64,000 bases of DNA, taken from contig OU015568.1 of assembly GCA_907165135.1 (NCBI GenBank), positions 15,821,208 through 15,885,207 on the forward strand. The letters run 5' to 3'. Within the stretch, counting starts at the first letter, position 1; every line of letters begins with the position of its first letter. This DNA is from Oikopleura dioica (Eukaryota > Animalia > Chordata). The notes beneath the pieces are model-generated. The model did no database searches and was not told the DNA's origin. It saw nothing but the letters and a program-made list of their open reading frames with translations. This document shows positions 13,320 through 25,110 of the stretch, one piece after another. The translations under genes and the position numbers were made by a program.

Positions 13320-13843
13320 CAGTGTTTGAAAAAATGGCCAAAACTCTCGTGAGCGAGTGAGCGCGAGCAGAGGCCACCAGATTTTTAACATGAGTGAGCG
13401 AGCGCGAGTAGACCCTTTTGATTTTTTTTCGTGAGCAAGCTAGCGCGAGCGCAGCTACCGTAATTTTTCTATGAGTGAGCGAGCATGAGCGCTCACTCGC
13501 TCGCTCGCGCTCACTCACAGCTTTTAAACAACGTTTTGATTGAGTGTTTTTCTTAAAAATTCTTGTACTTTTATATTTGAATGACTTTTAACTATAATTA
13601 GTCAATAATGACTACTCTAACGTGGCTGAAAGATAATATCCAGATAAATTTATAACTATTTAATGACTCTGTGTGATGAGTTGAGCGAGCGCGAGTGAGC
13701 GCAAGCAGGGACCTTTGAATTTTATGGTGAGTGAGCGAGTGCGAGCATAGGGTTCTCGAAATCACATGAGTGAGTGAGCATGAGCGCTAGCTCACTCGCT
13801 CGCGCTCGCTCGTGGCTCGCGCTCACCATTTTTTCAAACAATG
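13320..13843. mobile_element. hAT-type MITE, 524 bp
   Basis: TIRs CAGTGTTTGAAAAAATGG / CCATTTTTTCAAACAATG; exact 8-bp TSD ATACAGAT at 13312-13319 and 13844-13851; subterminal GAGCGAGC repeats. Confidence 0.92.
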
Positions 13844-13871
13844 ATACAGATTAATAGGATGTAGGGAAATG

Positions 13872-16800
13872 TTAGGGGTTTTGTCTTGCATTTGTGAACT
13901 TTCGCTTCGTTTTGCTGGAATCTTCGTAACAAGATCGTTTTCTGCCCTTACTCTCAGATGTTTCTGAAACTTCTTGAGTTGGAGTAAGAGTAATTGAATA
14001 GGCTTGAGGCAGGAGATACCATCTTTCTTTTTTCATATTGAAATTCTCGTTGACTAAAGCGAGAAACTCGTTGTTCTCTCCGTAATAAACGAAATCTTTG
14101 TAGCAATTGTAGCATTCCTTCATCATTTCGTCAGAAGCGTAGAACTCGCGAAAAAGAGGAATTCTGATTTGAGAGCCGGAAAGGTCGATGAGCGTGTTTT
14201 GGAGAATGAATTCGGAGTTTTCGATTCGATCGAGAACCATTTGGTGGAAAAATATTGAGCCGTCGGGATTAAGGTAGGCGCCGGTGACGGTTAAGGGGCG
14301 GGAGAATGAAAAGTTGGGATGTAGGAGGACTAAAAAGATTAGTGGACATTTCAAGAAAAGTAGACATTTCAAGATAACGGACATTTCAAGAAAGTGGTCA
14401 TTTCAAGAAACTATTGAAATGTCCGCTTTCCTTGAAATGTCCGTTGCTCTTGAAATGTCTGCTTTACTTGAAATGTCTATTTCGATTGAAATGTCTCTTT
14501 TTCTTGAAATGTCCCCATTTGATTTCATCAATTTTATTGTTGCGGTGATGCAAAATGAAAACTGCTTTCCCCCCACTCAGATCAAAAATTTTAAAATTTT
14601 GAAAAAAAATATTTTCCATTAAATATTTCAAATTTGCTTTTTGATGATTCAAAACCTTCATTGCAAGTAAGGCAGGCATAGAATCCGTCAAAAAACTTTC
14701 TCTCAGATTCAAAGTAAAGTTAATTTTGATTGAGGATGTGTGTGAAAAGGTAGTAGACAAAAATGCCGAAAAGGTCGATGATTATTTTCTGATTTCCTTT
14801 TCGGCACCTTGCCGAAAAGTATTTCCATTTTCAAGCCTTTTTCAGGAAAGAAAGGGAATCATTATCTAACCTTACGACCACAAACGGGAATTACCCCCAC
14901 CGACCACAATGTGTCATATATGACACATCCCCTTTACTGCCCTCTGGAGGCTAGTTTATAGGTCAAACCCGAGCATCTGGGCTCGGCAACCTGACCTGAG
15001 AAAAACCCTGAGTCAGGCCCCTGAGTACTGAGTACACAGGCCCTGACCTGTGTGCCTGAGTAAAATCGAGACTCGAGAAAAAACCCTGAGCCTGACCCTG
15101 ACCTGAGTTTAAGGACAGGCCTAAGTTGCTCACACAGGGCCTGAGTTACTGTATAAAAGTACTAAAAATGCTCAATTTACAACGCCAGGGGGTCAAATTA
15201 CACTGATTTTCCATCATCAGGGCGATTTTCTGATAACAGAATTGTCAGATTGAAAGCGATCTTCGCTATCTCAACTCGATCTCCGGGAAATTGCGACTAA
15301 AAGTGCAGAAAATTAGTGTATTTTGAAAGTGAACCCAATATTATGAAATTTTAACACTTTACAATAGCTGCATATGATACATTTTTGGAAAGCTTACATT
15401 CAGCACATTCATTTAGGATACGGCTGAGGGCGTCTGGGCTATGCCCGGAAAGCAATTTATAGGAATGAATAGTCAAATATAGGTACCTTGGTTAGCTAAC
15501 CCTTGGTTTATTGAAAAAAATTCCTAAGAAAAAGTTATCAAATAAAAAAAAGCTTCTGTAAATTTTAAGATTAGGGTCTAAGAAACCTAAAAAGAGTAAG
15601 AGTTGATAAGACCATTATGCAAACTTTGGAGTTTTGGAGCCCTGAAGATGGGCTATTTTCGCGATTTTAGCCGAGATGTCAACTTTGAAGCCGCCGGAAG
15701 TAGATTTTTCCTTGGGATTACGGAAAAAGCTTCTGTAATTCAGGAGATCTAAGATAGATCTCTATTAAAAGCTATTATGGGGTACTCTGGCATTCACAAG
15801 TCCAGAGTTTATGAGGCTTGCTTTGGGGAAAATCGACCACCCTAGCCTGTGAATTTGGTCGAAAAAAATCCAGTGTTTACCCTGAGTCAGGCCCCTGACT
15901 CTAACCTGAGTACCTGAGTCTGAGCAGGCCTGTTTTCCTGAGTACCTGACTGAGTGAAAAACCCTGACCTGAGTTCCTGAGTGAATTTCGAGAAATAATT
16001 TTCGAACCCTTACCCTGAGCCTGACTCTGTACTCAGGTTGCCGAGCCCAGCCGAGCATCATCCAGAACCTGAACCAAGATGCCGAAATAAAAATCATTTT
16101 TGTATGAATGCAAAGTGCCGAAATGGAAATCAAAATTTGGGGTAAACTTTTCGGCAAGCTTATTCATTCAAATTTATATGAAACGCTCTTTCTAGATAAA
16201 AAATTATCAACCCTAACCCTAACCAGAGTTGCAAATTTGTCAAAAATTTCTCGAAGCTGAGATAGCGGAGCCGACCTGAACATTTAGCTAAGCGGAGCTG
16301 AGCAGATCAAAAAATTTTTCTCCGTAGCTGAGCGTAGCGGAGCTGGGCAAAATTTTCTTCGCCGTAGCTGAGCGTTTCGGAGCTTACCAATTTTTTTTCC
16401 ACCGTAGCTGAGCGAAACTAGCTGGCCAAATGTCTTCCAGCCGTAGCTGAGCGTAGCGGAGCTGGACAAAATTTTCATCGCCGTAGCTGAGCAAAGCGGA
16501 GCTGACCAAATAATTTTTTCCAGTAGCTAAGCTAAGCTAAGCCTCAGCTCCGCTTCGCAAATTTGCAACTCTGACCCTAACCCTTAACCTGAACCTAATA
16601 TTTCAAGAAGACCTAAATTTATGTTCCGACCTTGGTTGGTGCCCACCTTCGACGGTGGGCTGATTTCTACGGTCCCTAAGACTCAGTTATTACCGTAGAA
16701 AAGAATGCATTAGTAGCAATTGAGGGAAAACTGTAGAAAAAGATGCGCATCTGGAAGATTCAACCATAATATGGTGCTTCTAGCTGGTACCGCAGAAAAT

Positions 16801-19379
16801 AAACTCGACAAAAATTTTTGATCGTTTTAGGACCAGTTGACTGAATGTTTTTCCCTTAATTGTTTAAATCTTTTAGTGCAAATTTAGGGAATATCATCCC
16901 ATCATTGCTACTTTATATTTAAGGAAACATCAGAGATCATGAATATATCAATTGCTTGAATCTTTATGTTTTTCAAAAATTTTAATTTTTGTTCTGAGTA
17001 GGGGGTCAGATATTATTAGTTTGAGTATGTGCAACAATTAAAATTAGAAAAAATAAAAAGTACATTTCAAGAAAAAGGGCCATTTCAATCTAAAAAGACA
17101 TTTCAAGAAAAGAGGACATTTCAATCAAAACAGACATTTCAAGAAAGTGGACATTTCAAGAATTATATTTTTTGCTTGAAATGTCTCTTTTTCTTGAAAT
17201 GTCCGCTTTCTTGAAATGTCCCTTTTCCTTGAAATGCCCACTAATCGACTAAAAAATGTTAAATGCAGAATTTGGCTATTTTAAAAACCCTTTTCAAAAT
17301 CGAAGTTCGCTTCTATGAAGGTGCCATATCTGATAATATCCCATCCACTTTCATTCAAATAAGTTCTGAATTTCATTCTTCTGAGAAGCAATTCAATTTT
17401 GTTTGTTTGAAATTCTTGTTCTTCTTTTTTAGGGTTAAGATTGAAGCCAGCCAAACTGCGTGGACAGACTATCATTGTTAATTGAATGAAGATCTTTTCG
17501 AGAGAAAAATAATATTTCATTTTCCAATCATCAACTTTCCAAACATTTTTGATTGCCCATCTCTAGGCCTCGGACGTAAAAATCCATCACCATCATCGGA
17601 GCATCGTATGGGATTGAGAATAGGCTCATTCGAAAGCTCTTGGAGAGGGCTTTCTTATGAGCAAATGAAAAAATTGGACCCTCTCTCCCAGTTTTGGGTA
17701 ATCTGCCGTTAAAGATAAAGTCGAAAAACATTTTTACGAAATAACTTGAAACAGGGAGACAGGGTCCAATTTTTTTATTTGCCGTCAAGAAAGTTCTCTT
17801 TAAGAGCTTTCGAATGAGCCTACTCTCGTCCTCATACGAAGCTCCGATGGTGAAAATCGATATTTTTACGTCCGAGGCCTACCCATCTCAAAAGAACGGA
17901 AACAGAAATGGGAACACAAAGATCGCTTTCTTTTTGATTTAAAACATTTTTTGTCACATTTTTGAAGTCGAAATTAATCTGTCTTGTCAGTTTTTGCTTG
18001 AGATTTGCCATTGCCGAAGATTTTGTCAAATTTGGATCGTCCAGGCAAAAGTCAGGAGCCACGTTTTTAAGAGAAATTATTTTTGACAAGTTTTCAATTT
18101 TTTCGGATAAGGGAGGGTAGATTGGGAGCCACTCAGCATGACATTCCTTGAAATATTTTTTCATCAGAAAAAAGAAGCTCTTACCTTTAGTTCTTCTTTA
18201 ATTTTCTCTCTTTCGTCTTCTTCGATCGGTTTGAAAAGAAGGCTCCACGCTGTTTCCCAATCACAAAGAATCAAAACGTGGAGTGGTGATCCTAATCCGT
18301 TTCCAACTTCTCCACAAACTTGCAAACTGTTTGAGAATGCAGCAGATCCAGCATCTTAGAAAAGATAGACGAGGTAATAATTATCAAAAAACTTCAATTC
18401 AAAACTTACATAAATATCTAAAATTTCTATATTTGCTCCCTTTCCTCGTGAAGCCCATTCTTCGGTAGCTCTTCCTTCCAGTTTTTTCATAAATTGTCCC
18501 GAAATCGATCCATTTACATTCTTTATTTTTTAATAAAATGTTTTCAGGCTTCTGATCTTGATGCAAAATTCCAATGCTCCGCAAATACTCTTCTCCCTCT
18601 TTCACTCCAATCGCAATTTTCTTTCTCTCTTCTAAATTCAAATCTTCCTTTTTCAGTCTGTTTCTCAAATCGGAGTCACATTTTTCCATAATCGTTATCC
18701 ATCCAAGGCAGTCCTCTCTTTTTTCGTCTTTGCTCGAGAAAATTTCGATGTTGCCGAAGTTTTTGATGACGTTTGGATGAAAAGGGATAACTTGAGCGTC
18801 GCCTTTTTTGTCGTTTTCAGCGATCTCGTAATCTTGAATTTAAAAATCAAAATTCATAATGACTTACAATTTGTTGAAGTAAGAATCTTACTAGGTAATA
18901 CCTTTCGAAAGATGAATCTCAAAGTCCAACGTCTCTTTCTTCGCAAAAAGCGCCGAGTCAAAAGCCTGAACTCGAACAGCAACTTCCAATTCATGGAATT
19001 TCTCTTCGAAAACAATCGCTTCTCCCCCAGAAGAAATAACTTTTTGCCCAAGACATTGATCGAGAATCCATTCACCAGTTTCTTCTTTCAGTTCTGACCG
19101 CTTAATCTTCCTTCCTTCGAGTACCGGATTTTCGTCGAGGATCATTTTTTGAAATGAAGTTATCGCCCATTTTTCTGATGTGTATCCTTCTCCATTTTTA
19201 AAAATAACCGCCTCCCAGCCACCGTTATAATCATATATAAAATCTCTTCTCTCGATCGACAAAATCAGCCTATCTAAATCATCCCTGCTCGTCGTTCTTT
19301 TCAATTTCTTTTTAAAATCTTCCAGCCAATTTTCAACGGCTTCTCTTGTCAATTCTTTTGGATGCGAAGAAACTTTCAT
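13872..19379 (-). CDS. Protein-kinase-like domain fused to a C-terminal papain-like (clan CA) cysteine peptidase domain; interrupted by two transposon insertions
   Basis: Kinase motifs VISSGGEAIVF, VAVR, HPNVI, HQDQKPENILL, WIDFG. Peptidase motifs NFDFKNVTKNVLNQKESDLC, RPLTVTG, FHQMVLDRIENSEFILQNT. Exons 19379-18900, ~18834-18404, ~18353-18185, ~18147-17883, 17562-17289 and 14329-13872 join in frame via GT-AG introns. Confidence 0.75.
14977..16050. mobile_element. hAT-type MITE (CTGGGCTCGGCAACCTGA family), nested in the Foldback element
   Basis: 18-bp TIRs; exact 8-bp TSD CCGAGCAT at 14969-14976 and 16051-16058; subterminal CCTGAGT repeats. Confidence 0.92.
16224..16573. mobile_element. hAT-type MITE (CAGAGTTG family), nested in the Foldback element
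   Basis: TIR CAGAGTTGCAAATTTG; exact 8-bp TSD ACCCTAAC at 16216-16223 and 16574-16581; internal AGCTGAGCGTAGCGG repeats. Confidence 0.93.
17564..17881. mobile_element. hAT-type MITE, 318 bp, inserted in a coding exon
   Basis: ~90-bp inverted arms starting TAGGCCTCGGACGTAAAAAT; exact 8-bp TSD CCCATCTC at 17556-17563 and 17882-17889. Removing the element restores the frame ...LLRWAIKNVWK... Confidence 0.95.
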
Positions 19380-20320
19380 TTTTCAAATATAATGTTGAAT
19401 GTCCAAGAAGTGAGAGCCTTGAAAATTTCTGGACTAGAATTATTTGGTAGTAAGTTTCTGCAAGAAATATTAACTCATTGGGCGAGTCTCAGTACACAAT
19501 CTGCAATTTTCGTTTGCTCTATTACAACATCAAACTAGCGTAGAAATTCCCCATCATACTTGAGGCTTTCTGTCTGGAATTATATTTTCCTGAAAACTTT
19601 TTTAAAAAATAGTCATGTTTATTTAGAATTTCAATATGTCTGCGCGCTTGAAGAAAGCTGTTGTCATCTTTGACTCAATATTCGGGTCAGACAGGGAGAT
19701 CTAGTTCAAGGTCATCATTAACAAATCGTAATAGTCGGTTAATGCAGTCAAAGGCTAAGTATATGAACAACTGATAACTTATCAGTGATCAGTCTATTTA
19801 CAATATCCCTCCGGAGCAAAAAAAGTAACGCATCGCCCGCGGCCGAGCCAGGTGTTCTATTTTGAATTCTAAATCTCCATCGACCGCCAACAACACTCGT
19901 AGGCTACCATTAAGCTCTTAAAAGATAGAGATTCAAGGTGAAGAACTTTCTCAGAACTGACCGAAGGTCTAAGCTTTAACCATTCGACATGGACGCAGAA
20001 ACCAGGTACTAAATACGACTAAAGAACCCTTTTAAAATGAGTTCGAACTTCGAAGAGACTTTGATGCATTTATTTTAACTGTTGTTTTCTCAATTGCGAA
20101 TTTGTTTAATTGCTCCAGTGAGTGAGTCACCTTTTTGTAAACGAAAGGGCTCTTAAAAATTCACCGTCGTTTGAGCGCTCTGCTCCAAAGAATAATAGAG
20201 AGCTGCCTCCTTATGACAAAAGGCATTTACCGACTAAAACAACCTGCTGAACGAGCTCGAGCTTCTTACCAAACTAAACGCTGGTTTCAGGGAGAAAATA
20301 ACGACTGTGCTGCGCTAGAG

Positions 20321-20636: not shown

Positions 20637-23600
20637 TCAAATAATCAAAGAATTTCTATTGGAGTTTCGTCCGGAGGAGCACTCGGACTCGAATTCAGGA
20701 TGAGATGTTGTCGTTGTTGTCCGCTTCTGTCTCCTTTTTGATGCTTTCTGATAGGCGCTAGAAAAAGATAAGACTCTTTCTCACCTGTTAAAAAAACTGG
20801 GCTCGGCAACCTGAGCTGAAAACCTGAGTCAGGCTCTGGAAGACCTAAAATGAAAAGCCGCGTAGCGGCTTTTTTTTTAGAAACAAAGCCGCAGAGCGGC
20901 TTCACAAATAAACCTTATAAATTTTCTTTAAATTCGTGGGGAAGCCGCTTTGCGGCTTCGTTTCTAAAAAACAGCCGCTACGCGGCTTTTCATTTTAACG
21001 CTTCCAGAACCTGACTCAGGTTTTCTACTCAGGTTGCCGAGCACTGTTAAAATACCGTCTGAAACCGTCACACCATATCTGCTGCTCAGAGTGAGATTCC
21101 AGATAGAAGGTCACTAAATATAGATAGTAAAGTAGCCGGCATAAAAAAATTCGGAAACCTCTATGCTGAGGACTACAGTAGGAAAATTCCTTGGAGCTTT
21201 TCTCTTGCTTGAATTCCGTCTCTGGCCGGATTTCGCTCACAAAAACGTCGAATTTAGGATGATCGCCCGGCGAATTTCGAATTAAAACTGCCCAGAAAGA
21301 GTTGATCCCGTCGTTTGTGTAGTCTAGTAAAGCAATCCATCTCTTAATTTTTAGATCAGATAAGCCAAAAAAGAAAACCTGCCTTGGAGAATTTGAAGGA
21401 TGAAAGATGAAGTTTGTTGGTCGATGGAGACGATATTCTTACTGGAACTATGCCACAGCACTCTGCTCGCTCAAACATCTCGTCGTAGGGCATTATGTAG
21501 TCATGTTTGATGTAAATTGAGAGAGCCTCATTTCGATCATTATTTTCATATCGTTCAAAAAGACGCGCTCTTTCTGATCAATTTCCTGGGCCTTTTGAAG
21601 AGTCGCCATTCCAATCACCTCAAATGCTTTAATTTTTTCACTACAAGAGGCGCAAATCATGTTGGTATTTTTTCAGTCTCGAAGACAAGCCTCGTGACTT
21701 CGATCAGAGGACATTTGTGACATTGAGATCCTCCACAGCAATCACAAACTGCGAACGATTCGCTTTTCTCCCCACAAGCCCAGCATTTCGAAACGGTACA
21801 TGGCCACACAGCTCGTGGGGCAACTTTTCCGACGATTCCGGAATTTGCTACGTCTCATTCATGGTTTATCAAGAAGTAGAAAATCTTCCTAAAGGGATAG
21901 TTTCTTCATATAAAAACCATTTTCATGTGATATTTTTTCGAGAAAGAGCTCAGACTCAAAAACACGAATCCAGTCATTATAATCGCTCGCAACGAGGTCA
22001 AGACAAATCTCCTTAGATCTTATTCGAAAACCTTTGCGTTCGCAATTCGTGTGATCGAAGACTTCGATCTTTCCGAAGTTTTGACTTGTGTATGGCTTCC
22101 CAATCAAAACTTTCGGGAAATCGGACTTTTCGTATTTCAGTGACGAAGGTTTGACCGAAGCTCTTAAAATGCATGTTCCAGGAAGAGAGAGATGAGTTTT
22201 TTGGTGTTTTCGAGTCGCTTCTCCGAGGAAAACGATCAGATCTTCGTCGGGGACTTCGTTGGAAGAAGTTCTAGTGAAAAAGTCCCCAGAATCGCGATGA
22301 TTTCGCGGCTGTATTATAATCAAGTCGACGTTGGTCTTATTTATGCTCGGGCAGTCGACCTTTCCGTATTTGTAGAGCTCCCAGCGCATTATTTCTTGAA
22401 CTTTATTCTTGTTCGGCGCCAGTATATGCCCGTACTTTTCGATCAAGATCTTTTTGTGCTCGTGATGTTGCTCTACTCGAACTAACTCGTTGATTTTCTT
22501 GACCATTTTTCTGATCTTCTCTAGCGCTTCTTCTGCCTCTTCGTGATCGAAGTGATCTTCGGGAAGACATTTGAGATAGTCGCGGAATAAGAGATCGTAG
22601 CGAGTGAGCCGTTGCATCAAAACGATAATTTTCGAATTCAAAGTCATCAGATTCTGCTTCGAAAAGCCATCATCTTCACGAACTTCGTCGAGAAGTCTTT
22701 CGATGATTTTTGACCGGTCATTTTGCTGAACGATTCCCGAAATCAACAAAGAAAGAAACGTTTTGGCGTACCTGTTTGAAAAAATCTTCGTAAATTGAAA
22801 AGACGTACTCATCTGGTTTCAGCACTGAAAATAATCGGCCCATGACGAATCCATTTGTATCAATCTGAGAGACGGCGATTTTCATTAGTGGTTCAACAAT
22901 GCCATCATGGAGGAGTAGAATTCTTTCCAAGGATCCAGGCGCCCCGAAGAGAATTCTTGTTTCATGCGAGTTCGTCATTTTCCGATGCTTTTCGAACTTT
23001 CTTTTCAATTTGCAGATTTCTGTCAAATCGGAGATGTACTTCTTTTCGGTCGCCAAAATTTCCTTGCAAAGTTTTTCACAGTGAGATCGTCTTTTGATGT
23101 AAATATCGCCTGATGCTGGCTTGAATGCAATTTCTTCAATGAAATCTCGGAGTTTGCTTTTTTCCCGCCGCAAAAATCCGAAATCGTCGATTCTTTCGTA
23201 AAGATTGTCTCTTCTATCTTCCAAATGGACATTGCCAAAGACATCGATTTCAACGATATCTTGGTTGTTGAATTTAAAAGCTTTGAAGCGAGAGAAAGTT
23301 TCCAAAAGATCGACAACAGAATTGAAAGTTGAGAGCTTTAGCGGATCATTTTTGTCGATGTTCTCGGAAAGACGAAGAAAACATCCGAATAAGTGGTCAA
23401 TATTCTCGTCAAATTTGCTCAGAAAGTCATTCAATTTCTCAATAAGCTTCGTTCTTAATTCAAGTGTTATTGGGAAAAAGTAATCCGCATATGCGACCAC
23501 TTCCTCGGTGGAATTTTATTAGCAAAAAAAGTGTCACATTTCTTATGATGCCTTAGCGCAATATTTTGAAAAAAGAAATCTATAGATAGGACATACAGTT

Positions 23601-25110
23601 ACTTCCTCAGTGGAATTTTATTACTACACAATTTGTAAAAATTGAGTTAAACTTATGCCATCTTAGCATAAGATTTTGAAAGTCACCACTTCCTTGACTG
23701 AAGTGGAATTTTATTACTCCGCAAAGTGTAAACCTTGAGTAATCTTACCTTTGCGCAATATTTTCTTCAATATATTCAAATCGATAAAGTGATACTCTGA
23801 AAAACGATGACCCCGGTTCACGTAGAAGTTCCCTCAAGTTCTCTGCAATCTCCTTGACCCCGCAAAATGAAAGCTTGAGGACTCCACAAGCTCTTATAGA
23901 AGGCTCAAGCCAGCATCGAAACAGAACAGCAAGTTCTTCGACAGCAGTTTCATGCGTCTTTGATTGACCAAAAAGAGTCGATCGTATTCTCGGATCGAGA
24001 TCTGGAATGTGCCGCTTTATAAAACAAAGATCGAGAAGGCTTTCAGTAACATCGTGAGCTGCGAGCAATAGGTCTTTGAGCAGGCAGCCTTCGTTAGAAT
24101 CAGTCGACTTTTACTGGGCAATTTACATTCTCGGGTTCAAAGGTAAATTGATGTAAATTATCGCTTTTCCTGTTCAATTTGCAAAAATGATTTTTCATTA
24201 ATTTTTTCCGATAGAAAAAGAGTCCTGAAGCTTGATAGATATTTATCATTCAAATTGTCGTCATAGCCTTCTTTTAAAAATCTTAACTTTCCTCACTACC
24301 AAATTTTTATTACTGAAAAAAATTTTAAAAGTCGAAGAAAGATTTTCCTTTCCTAAAGACCCGCCGCCGGAATTTTGCAAAATCGACTGCAAGTTTGTTG
24401 AATTTTTCAGCCGAAGCAAGTCAAGAAATGCAAGTGCCGATTTCAATTTATCCGGATGGCCGGCAGGAATGAGTTTGAAATAATGATGAGCGAAATCGGT
24501 ATAGTCAACGAGTCGTCTTTGCACTTGTCTGTGGAACTCTTTGTAGCTCTCTAGCTGCGTTTTTGAGAAGCCGGGAGCATCTCCTTGTCTCAAAAGCTCT
24601 TTAACATGAGATCTTCTTTTTGAAGCCTCTGCAATAAATCGCCTGTATGAAGTGTAAGCCGTGGAAGAAAGCTCAAGTGCATAGAAAAGATTCCCAAAGG
24701 CAAGTCTTTCATACTAAACGACAACGAAATCGGGACTTTTTCTCCTGAAATTGGTCTACCTGGTCACATGTTTGGACAGTCCGAAGAAGAGGAAGGAGAT
24801 AATTCTGGTGAAGCTTGTAAATTGGCATCAAAAATGAGGGGCTTTCGAAGAGTAAATTGTTTCTTTGGCTGAAGGGTACGTCCATTCGATAGACATCTTC
24901 CATGTGGAGAAAGTCTTTCAGCATTTGCACGTATTTTACTTCATCATTTATGAGCTCGGTTATCAGGGATTCGAGCTCAGGCGGAATCGAAGAGCGGACT
25001 GATGGAATGCGCCTTTTACTCTGTCTTCTTCTCCTGCATTTGTGGACCGTTACTTTATTGCATTCTCTGCACAAGTTATCCATATTGCACTTGTCATGCA
25101 CTTCTCTCAA
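20637..25110 (-). CDS. RhoGEF with two DH domains, PH, FYVE-like finger and second PH (FGD-like), multi-exon
   Basis: DH motifs ELINDEVKYVQML...QRRLVDY...HPD and EILATEKKYISDL...MQRLTRYDLLFRDYLKCLPEDHFD. PH-like ends ICLDLVASDYNDWIRVFE and TFYLESHSEQQIWCDGFRRAYQK. Cys pattern CWAC..CDCC..CHKC..CASC. The frame breaks near 21540-21670; could be one or two genes. Confidence 0.65.
20797..21046. mobile_element. hAT-type MITE, 250 bp, same TIR family as 14977-16050, in the last intron of the RhoGEF gene
   Basis: Ends CTGGGCTCGGCAACCTGAG / CTCAGGTTGCCGAGCACTG; imperfect A-rich TSD (TTAAAAAAA vs TTAAAATA); internal palindrome AGCCGCGTAGCGGCT. Confidence 0.85.
23498..23720. repeat. Three degenerate copies of an ACTTCC..GTGGAATTTTATTA unit at ~100-bp spacing (intronic)
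   Basis: Copies near 23498, 23600 and 23686 read directly. Confidence 0.7.

What the first reader, a model, noticed from the sequence alone, without database searches (positions are those of the whole stretch)
13872..19379. Kinase fused to a papain-like cysteine peptidase with an intact catalytic set
Once two transposons and the short introns are removed, the scattered ORFs form one ~690-aa frame. The C-terminal half mirrors papain: NFDFKNVTKNVLNQKESDLC aligns with the C1A consensus (S)FDWR..VTPVKNQG.CGSC, with Gln-to-Cys spacing of 6 as in papain Q19/C25. RPLTVTG matches the PV.V strand. FHQMVLDRIENSEFILQN has His-to-Asn spacing of 16 as in H159/N175. There is no signal peptide or propeptide, so it would be cytosolic. 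The kinase is atypical (VAVR for VAIK, HQD for HRD, DFG kept) and may be a pseudokinase. I know of no standard metazoan family with this architecture. It could be a lineage-specific switchable protease (defence, cell death or deconjugase-like); that role is pure inference.
Basis: partly seen in the sequence, partly recalled or inferred. Interest (0 to 1): 0.88.

Follow-up and report, generated by a model that had tools for sequence, protein, structure and literature searches.

The report
Transposon-hit kinase–papain-fold peptidase fusion gene
This is one copy, interrupted by two transposons, of a large unstudied Oikopleura gene family whose protein joins an unusual kinase-like domain to a papain-type cysteine peptidase domain with all four catalytic residues kept; the family is interesting, but this copy showed no transcripts.

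Summary
On the minus strand, six exons (19379-13872) give one 688-aa frame once a 318-bp exonic MITE and a 2.9-kb element in the last intron are removed.

- **Kinase-like half:** the N-terminal half is a real but atypical protein-kinase fold. It has VAVR in place of VAIK, it keeps HxD, N and DFG, and it lacks APE.
- **Peptidase half:** the C-terminal ~230 aa match no sequence family. AlphaFold models of two paralogs are confident (pLDDT above 90). An unbiased search of 48,161 solved chains returned only clan CA (papain-like) cysteine peptidases in its top 50 (Z up to 9.2).
- **Catalytic set:** Gln428, Cys434, His565 and Asn581 sit where papain's set sits. They are kept in 95-97% of paralogs.
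- **Family:** the gene belongs to an Oikopleura dioica family with more than 50 annotated kinase-peptidase proteins of about 700 aa, some in tandem. It evolves under purifying selection (dN/dS 0.2-0.3), and paralogs are transcribed.
- **Membership:** it is not a C1A member (no Pfam match, no signal peptide, no propeptide). It is best seen as a new clan CA family in a new architecture.
- **This copy:** it needs exact splicing of the MITE and use of a distal acceptor, and it got no RNA reads.

This scan already noted the same family at another locus of this genome (s1-330350).

The parts
18902..19379 (-). Exon 1 (residues 1-159 and the first base of codon 160). It holds the family-specific N-terminal domain and the kinase N-lobe, with a degenerate Gly loop (SSGGEA) and VAVR (Arg136 at 18974-18972) in place of the beta-3 lysine.
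   Evidence: family alignment; the AF2 full-length paralog has helices and strands at 1-120, then a kinase fold.
18410..18832 (-). Exon 2, the kinase core: HQD (Asp252), Asn257, DFG (Asp269) and the conserved activation segment GRxSYRxMGFxRKGSKYR.
   Evidence: Pfam Pkinase 5.6e-11, 42.8 bits, above the 31.7 cut-off. The frame is confirmed by paralogs L001 and L002 and by the family alignment.
18185..18354 (-). Exon 3, a short remnant of the kinase C-lobe (AGSAAF..., CDWETAWSLLFKPIEE). There is no APE motif.
17883..18146 (-). Exon 4, first part. It holds the predicted disordered linker with the near-invariant DDPNLTKS motif, then Gln428 (17936-17934) and Cys434 (17918-17916) at the start of the peptidase helix.
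   Evidence: Paralog fragments P0001-P0004 are 72-98% identical.
17564..17881 (.). 318-bp MITE inserted in coding exon 4. It has perfect 20-nt terminal inverted repeats (TAGGCCTCGGACGTAAAAAT) and an 8-bp target duplication GAGATGGG at 17882-17889 and 17556-17563. Together with the flanking G of each target-duplication copy, its ends give a GT (17882-17881) ... AG (17564-17563) pair, a 320-nt span that would splice in frame and add Arg-Trp.
   Evidence: (I24, I1). Paralogs are uninterrupted at this site.
17289..17562 (-). Exon 4, second part: the helical (L) lobe of the peptidase domain. This copy has Cys for the near-invariant Tyr of YPRS, and Val-Trp for Asp-Leu next to the MITE.
14337..17246 (.). 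2.9-kb foldback-type element with nested repeats, inserted at the 3' end of an intron that was originally about 40 nt long. It has 19-nt terminal inverted repeats (GATTAGTGGRCATTTCAAG). Its target duplication TTTTTAG|TC duplicates the 3' splice site, and the proximal copy reads into the element and stops after two codons.
   Evidence: (I5).
13872..14329 (-). Exon 5: the beta-sheet (R) lobe of the peptidase domain, with RPLTVTG, His565 (14246-14244), Asn581 (14198-14196) and WYLLPQAYS, then a Ser/Lys-rich tail and the stop codon at 13874-13872.
   Evidence: 91 representative clusters hit it; His 56/58 and Asn 59/62 conserved.

Best explanation
The locus is a transposon-interrupted member of a large gene family known so far only from the larvacean Oikopleura dioica and from unlabelled marine-metagenome fragments.

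The family protein is about 700 aa and has four parts:
- a family-specific N-terminal domain;
- an atypical protein-kinase-fold domain, in which the beta-3 Lys is always Arg, the catalytic-loop Asp and Asn and the DFG are kept, APE is absent and the C-lobe is shortened;
- a disordered linker carrying an almost invariant DDPNLTKS motif;
- a papain-fold (clan CA) cysteine peptidase domain with the Gln, Cys, His and Asn set.

Shown: the architecture, both folds, the conservation of the catalytic residues, purifying selection, and transcription of paralogs.

Inferred: the C-terminal domain is an active thiol peptidase or isopeptidase. The kinase-like domain acts as a nucleotide-binding regulatory or targeting module rather than a conventional kinase. 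The conserved linker may be a docking or self-cleavage site.

This copy encodes the full protein only under two conditions. The exonic MITE must be spliced exactly at its GT...AG ends, and the spliceosome must skip a duplicated proximal acceptor for one 2.9 kb away. No reads of it were seen, so it is most likely a recently disabled or silent copy.
For: - **Gene model:** a 688-aa frame. It is collinear with annotated 692-720-aa paralogs over residues 1-651 and with contigs L001-L003.
- **Family size and range:** 51 proteins at E up to 1e-3, and every named one is O. dioica. Most carry Pkinase. There are 91 clusters at 50% identity for exon 5. All named members looked up are O. dioica. One tandem pair was seen.
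- **Kinase:** Pfam match, fold match, and the motif pattern across 21 paralogs.
- **Peptidase fold:** the AF2 domain model has pLDDT above 90 over residues 90-316. The full-length model has pTM 0.82. All top-50 hits are clan CA in the Foldseek-seeded search and in the unbiased search (9 chains at Z of 8 or more, 54 at Z of 5 or more out of 48,161). ESM Atlas shape hits are C39-like, C10 and C70, and most nearest clusters by language-model features are Peptidase_C1.
- **Catalytic set:** Cys is the first residue of a helix. His lies in a strand, and Asn ends the next strand. Conservation is Gln 38/40, Cys 38/39, His 56/58 and Asn 59/62.
- **Constraint:** dN/dS is 0.20-0.27 between this copy and three relatives.
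- **Expression:** reads piling at 18019-18050 carry flanks that translate to P0108-like paralog sequence. This copy is otherwise uncovered, and no listed RNA run holds exon 5.
- **Transposon anatomy:**
Against: - No sequence similarity to any peptidase family was found. Z of about 9 is middling on the tool's own scale.
- No coordinates were available, so the geometry of the Cys-His-Asn set was not measured.
- The structures are of paralogs 46-49% identical to this copy, not of this copy.
- No biochemical data exist.
- Arg at the beta-3 position argues against normal kinase activity but does not prove inactivity.
- The RNA runs may come from another O. dioica lineage, because their reads match the Bergen-assembly paralogs. 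Absence of reads is therefore weak evidence that this copy is silent.
- This copy differs at 33 of 177 family-conserved positions, though many changes are conservative and it belongs to a divergent subgroup.
Confidence: 0.72

Rival explanations
1. The C-terminal domain has the papain fold and a working Cys-His-Asn set, but it is not a protease in the usual sense. It would remove or transfer a modification, as a ubiquitin-like isopeptidase, amidase, transglutaminase or acyltransferase, as many clan CA relatives do.
For: The fold matches include Atg4, UfSP1/2, ZUFSP, RavD, phytochelatin synthase and PeiR alongside the cathepsins. This copy has no signal peptide or prodomain. Both points fit an intracellular conjugate-processing enzyme.
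Against: The best Z scores go to true endopeptidases (xylellain, Der p 1, PCAT1, staphopain). Nothing in the data separates the possible substrates.
Confidence: 0.25
2. The papain-fold domain is a non-catalytic binding module, like the C39-like domain of HlyB. The protein would then be a pure scaffold built from two dead enzyme folds.
For: The HlyB C39-like domain is among the best structural matches (Z 8.0-8.8). The kinase half already looks degenerate.
Against: Gln, Cys, His and Asn are each kept in 95-97% of more than 38 diverged paralogs. That is not expected for a dead site, since the HlyB C39-like domain lacks the catalytic Cys (my own knowledge of that family).
Confidence: 0.08
3. This copy is still functional. 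The MITE is a newly born intron that is removed exactly, the distal acceptor is used, and the gene is expressed only in a stage, tissue or strain that was not sampled.
For: The frame stays open through all six exons, with canonical GT-AG at the MITE ends. All four catalytic residues are intact. Pairwise dN/dS is no higher than between its relatives, and its distance to outgroups is not raised.
Against: RNA coverage was zero in three poly(A) runs in which paralogs are seen. The duplicated proximal acceptor sits 40 nt from the donor and leads to a stop after two codons. This copy has unique non-conservative changes at near-invariant sites: Asp to Val and Leu to Trp beside the MITE, and Tyr to Cys in YPRS.
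Confidence: 0.25
4. The 13872-14329 exon belongs to a different gene, and the fusion is an artefact of joining ORFs.
For: About 3 kb separate it from the previous exon, and no read joins them.
Against: The gap is a transposon with terminal inverted repeats and a target duplication. Contigs L002 and L003 join the same two exons across 40-90 nt. More than 20 annotated proteins carry both halves.
Confidence: 0.02

Closest known systems
Papain family (MEROPS C1A; Pfam PF00112)
   Same: The order Gln-Cys-His-Asn is the same. Gln-Cys spacing is 6, His-Asn spacing is 16, and Cys-His distance is about 130. Cys sits at the N-terminus of a helix, and His and Asn sit on neighbouring strands. The best structural matches are C1 members (xylellain Z 9.2, Der p 1 and Der f 1 Z 9.1, cruzain and cathepsins Z 8-8.7). 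Language-model neighbours are mostly Peptidase_C1 clusters.
   Different: There is no detectable sequence similarity. There is no signal peptide, no I29 propeptide, and no Trp after the Asn. The domain is fused behind a kinase-like domain.
Peptidase C39 / C39-like (PF03412, PF13529), e.g. PCAT1, ComA, HlyB N-terminal domain
   Same: It has the compact papain fold and a Gln six residues before the Cys. Structural matches are Z 8.0-8.8 in solved structures and TM about 0.5 in ESM Atlas. One paralog cluster is auto-named 'Peptidase C39-like' in AlphaFold DB.
   Different: No Pfam match was found. It is not attached to an ABC transporter. The third catalytic residue is Asn here, against Asp in C39 (my own knowledge). 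The helical lobe is larger.
Pseudokinases with Arg at the beta-3 lysine position (mammalian KSR1/2; from my own knowledge)
   Same: It has a kinase fold with Lys replaced by Arg in the VAIK motif, while the catalytic-loop Asp and the DFG are kept. This suggests nucleotide binding with scaffold or allosteric use.
   Different: It has no sequence kinship beyond the kinase superfamily. The nearest solved sequence match is TTK at E 2e-4 over 60 residues. It has no APE motif, a shortened C-lobe and a fused peptidase.

Membership tests
Peptidase family C1A (papain) | Significant match to the family profile (Pfam PF00112 Peptidase_C1) | tested here: not met
   No Pfam hit at E up to 10 for the window's three peptidase exon pieces or for seven paralogs. 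The family profile found nothing in PDB sequences at E up to 10.
Peptidase family C1A (papain) | Gln, Cys, His, Asn in that order with papain-like spacing | tested here: met
   Gln428, Cys434, His565 and Asn581, with spacings 6, 131 and 16. They are conserved in 95-97% of paralogs.
Peptidase family C1A (papain) | Secretory signal peptide and an I29-type inhibitory propeptide | tested here: not met
   This copy's N-terminus is hydrophilic and is followed by 350 aa of N-terminal and kinase-like domains. No Inhibitor_I29 hit was found. No dedicated signal-peptide predictor was available.
Clan CA (papain-like fold) | Two-lobed fold with the nucleophile Cys at the start of a helix, facing His and Asn/Asp on a beta-hairpin | tested here: met
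   AF2 models of paralogs P0111 and P0108 show Cys as the first residue of a helix, His in a strand, and Asn at the end of the next strand. All top-50 structure matches are clan CA. Inter-residue distances could not be measured.
Clan CA (papain-like fold) | Thiol-dependent catalytic activity | not testable with these tools
   This needs recombinant protein and probes or substrates.
Peptidase C39 / C39-like | Match to PF03412 or PF13529, and an N-terminal position on an ABC exporter or a double-glycine leader substrate | tested here: not met
   No Pfam match. The architecture is kinase-like domain plus peptidase. There is only shape similarity.
Eukaryotic protein kinase superfamily | Match to Pkinase (PF00069) above the gathering score, and a kinase fold | tested here: met
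   Exon 2 alone scores 42.8 bits against a 31.7 cut-off. Paralogs score 34.6-44.8 bits. Fold matches to solved kinases reach E about 1e-6.
Eukaryotic protein kinase superfamily (catalytically competent) | Beta-3 Lys (VAIK), a GxGxxG loop, HRD Asp, Asn, DFG Asp and APE | tested here: not met
   The Lys is Arg in this copy and in all 21 aligned paralogs. The Gly loop is SEGGEA. HxD, Asn and DFG are kept, and APE is absent.

The most novel reading that the evidence does not exclude
The family is a fast-diversifying intracellular surveillance or genetic-conflict system. In this reading the degenerate kinase domain is a bait or sensor, modified or bound by a pathogen or selfish-element factor. Its state would switch on the fused papain-fold peptidase, perhaps after cleavage at the conserved DDPNLTKS linker, to trigger a defence or cell-death response. 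That would be an animal analogue of plant kinase-decoy guarding, built on a previously unrecognised peptidase family.
Probability: 0.1. Interest if true: 0.85.

Novelty: new variant of a known kind. Interest (0 to 1): 0.58.

Why it matters
Oikopleura has one of the smallest and most streamlined animal genomes. Even so, it maintains more than 50 copies, some in tandem, of a 700-aa protein that no one has described, under purifying selection and with transcription.

The protein couples two enzyme folds that are central to signalling and proteolysis, in an arrangement not found in Swiss-Prot or among solved structures. The peptidase half would be a new clan CA family recognisable only by structure.

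Working out its substrate, and how the Lys-to-Arg kinase module controls it, could reveal a new type of regulated protease. It could also hint at what replaces lost immune or cell-death machinery in larvaceans.

For this locus, the value is mainly as a clean natural example of transposon damage: a coding-exon MITE with splice-competent ends, and a duplicated acceptor, in a member of that family.

Tried and rejected
- **Direct join of 17885 to 14329 (596 aa).** Rejected. It needs a non-GT donor and skips exon 4b, and paralogs show the continuous exon.
- **Frameshift in the kinase activation segment.** The alternative frame reads LEGRATEEWAS...DIY. Rejected, because paralogs conserve the model frame GRxSYRxMGYxRRGSKYR.
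- **Paralogs in the window.** None were found.
- **Sequence searches for the peptidase half.** All were blank: Pfam on exon pieces and on paralogs, NCBIfam, and the family profile against PDB sequences.
- **ESM Atlas features on exon 5 alone.** This gave LptF/LptG clusters at 0.89 with low recognition, which I treat as chance.
- **Foldseek against PDB.** It gave only weak E-values (0.02-0.3), although the hits were enriched in clan CA. VIA-align was needed.
- **False hits.** P0051 and P0083 from the representative search are VCBS-repeat bacterial proteins.
- **Conservation count from A2.** This was spoiled by misplacement of the exon-1 fragment. I redid it with the full model.
- **Literature.** Two searches found no description of the family.
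- **Not possible here.** I could not fold the window's own spliced protein, because there is no reference for a spliced sequence. I could not get model coordinates to measure active-site distances.

Full report
**1. Anatomy of the locus**

The minus strand between 19379 and 13872 carries four long ORF pieces. Reading the sequence and testing splice joins gives six exons: 19379-18902, 18832-18410, 18354-18185, 18146-17883, 17562-17289 and 14329-13872. All are bounded by GT...AG, and together they translate to 688 aa without a stop. Three introns are 38-69 nt, as expected for a larvacean. The other two gaps are transposon insertions.

The first is a 318-bp MITE at 17564-17881. It has perfect 20-nt terminal inverted repeats, a 117-nt internal inverted repeat and an 8-bp target duplication, GAGATGGG. 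It lies inside a coding exon. Paralog fragments read straight through the site as LLRWAIKND. Taken with the flanking G of each target-duplication copy, its ends supply a GT (17882-17881) and an AG (17564-17563). Splicing there would restore the frame with two extra residues, Arg-Trp.

The second is a 2.9-kb foldback-type element at 14337-17246, with 19-nt terminal repeats and arrays of a GACATTTCAAG unit. It landed in the last few bases of an intron that was originally about 40 nt long. Its target duplication, TTTTTAG|TC, contains the 3' splice site, so there are now two acceptors. The proximal one reads Val-Asp-stop inside the element. Only the distal one, 2.96 kb away, gives the full protein.

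**2. The join is real**

The 688-aa model aligns over residues 1-651 with annotated Oikopleura dioica proteins of 692-720 aa at 45-48% identity. Short metagenome contigs L001-L003 carry relatives that are 50-88% identical. They have the same exon order, the same reading frame in the kinase activation segment, and a 40-90-nt intron between the exons that are 3 kb apart here. The idea that 13872-14329 is a separate gene is therefore excluded.

**3. The family**

- A word-indexed search with the peptidase region of paralog P0070 found 51 proteins. Every named one is from O. dioica, and most are annotated only as 'protein kinase domain-containing' or 'uncharacterized'.
- An exhaustive HMMER scan of 1.84 billion representatives with exon 5 found 91 clusters at 50% identity. 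Apart from two false VCBS hits, these are O. dioica entries or unlabelled marine metagenome ORF fragments.
- Two members lie head to tail about 1 kb apart on one scaffold, each in about 2.2 kb.
- No paper describing the family was found.

**4. Kinase half**

Exon 2 alone passes Pfam's Pkinase gathering score, and so do the paralogs. The full-length AF2 model of P0108 (pLDDT 79.7, pTM 0.82) matches many solved and Swiss-Prot kinases at E about 1e-6, without pointing to a subfamily. The best sequence match among solved structures is TTK, at E 2e-4 over 60 residues.

Across 21 paralogs and this copy:
- the Gly loop is S(E/S)GGEA;
- the beta-3 lysine is always arginine (AVR);
- the catalytic loop keeps H-x-D-x-K-x-x-N, and DFG is kept;
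- the activation segment is a conserved GRxSYRxMGYxRKGSKYR;
- there is no APE, and the C-lobe ends soon after a CDWxTxWSL helix.

Retention of the metal- and phosphate-binding residues suggests that nucleotide binding is kept; this is my inference.

**5. Peptidase half**

No sequence method recognises it. I aligned 68 family sequences and fragments (A1) and predicted the structure of P0111 residues 354-669. Residues 90-316 are modelled at pLDDT above 90. The 90 residues before them, which include DDPNLTKS, are disordered in this model and in the full-length model.

- Foldseek gave only weak hits, but they were enriched in clan CA peptidases.
- Against AlphaFold DB clusters, the family's own entries came first and bacterial 'Peptidase C39-like' proteins came next.
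- VIA-align on Foldseek's top 1000 chains returned clan CA cysteine peptidases in every one of the 50 listed entries.
- VIA-align without Foldseek, on 48,161 representative chains, gave the same result. Matches include xylellain, Der p 1 and Der f 1, cruzain, cathepsins B, K, S, L, X, H and C, falcipain, staphopain, streptopain, PCAT1, ComA and HlyB C39 domains, Atg4, UfSP, IdeS and AvrRpt2.
- Z reaches 9.2, with 113-172 aligned residues spanning model residues about 85-316. Z of 9 is middling by the tool's own note. What carries weight is that all 50 listed matches of an unbiased search belong to one clan.
- ESM Atlas shape searches gave C39-like, C10 and C70 clusters.
- About three quarters of the nearest named clusters by language-model features were Peptidase_C1.

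**6. Catalytic set**

In the models the conserved Cys is the first residue of a long helix (P0111 domain residue C92, helix 92-108; P0108 C450, helix 450-466). The His lies in a strand (H222 in strand 219-230; H580 in 577-588). The Asn ends the next strand (N240 and N596). From my own knowledge, this is papain's arrangement.

In the family alignment Gln is kept in 38/40 sequences, Cys in 38/39, His in 56/58 and Asn in 59/62. I could not obtain coordinates, so the side-chain geometry is untested.

**7. Selection and expression**

For exon 4 (the linker plus the helical lobe), dN/dS between this copy and L003, L001 and L002 is 0.27, 0.26 and 0.20. Between L003 and L001 it is 0.37. This copy is no further from outgroups than its siblings are. 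It does differ at 33 of 177 family-conserved positions. Three of these are non-conservative changes unique to it: Asp to Val and Leu to Trp next to the MITE, and Tyr to Cys in YPRS.

Three poly(A) RNA runs and one single-cell run gave essentially no coverage and no splice joints over 13750-19500. No listed RNA run holds exon 5. The only pile of reads, at 18019-18050, covers the DDPNLTKS codons. The non-matching ends of those reads translate to IISLPNVSNS and CQMSSLKQK, which is exactly the flanking sequence of paralogs such as P0108.

So family members are transcribed in those samples, while this copy is not seen. The samples may be of another O. dioica lineage, so this is weak evidence that the copy is silent.

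**8. Verdict**

- The domain is a new, structure-only member of clan CA, not a C1A peptidase.
- The architecture belongs to a large O. dioica family rather than to this locus alone.
- This copy is probably a recently disabled or silent member.

Function beyond 'regulated thiol peptidase or isopeptidase' is inference. The size of the family and its transposon-damaged copies fit a conflict or defence role, but nothing here tests that.

Noticed in passing
window 17556-17889: With the flanking G of each target-duplication copy, the exonic MITE's ends give a GT...AG pair that would splice in frame (plus Arg-Trp). This looks like an 'introner-like' birth of an intron. It was already noted by the scan as s1-348293, and no RNA reads were available to test the splicing.
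   Followed up: partly
window 14328-17254: The 2.9-kb foldback element is built from arrays of GACATTTCAAG units in both orientations at each end, and it holds other repeat-rich inserts (TTAGGG-like runs and CAGG/CTCAGG-rich stretches around 15000-16600). Its target duplication duplicates the 3' splice site (scan note s1-348377).
   Followed up: partly
paralogs P0109, P0114, P0122 and P0140 (residues 1-25); P0108 and P0100 (residues 1-12): Many annotated paralogs begin with a hydrophobic stretch (MLEFSILAILATCIAGM... or MLTEFCFLAALT). This could be a signal anchor. The window copy starts 10-30 residues later, with a hydrophilic sequence and an in-frame stop two codons upstream of its ATG.
   Followed up: no
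P0009 (O. dioica E4XUR1), 290 aa: This annotated protein holds two tandem copies of the beta-sheet lobe. The second copy has Tyr in place of the catalytic His (FYKM for FHQM). It may be a degenerate internal duplication or a merged gene model.
   Followed up: no
L001 about 1090-1100: The closest full exon-4 relative, on a metagenome contig, has an in-frame stop (QEN*IELLL).
   Followed up: no
window 21889-25110 (minus strand): The next gene upstream appears to be an unrelated multi-exon gene with long ORFs of 307 and 260 aa. Its identity was not examined.
   Followed up: no
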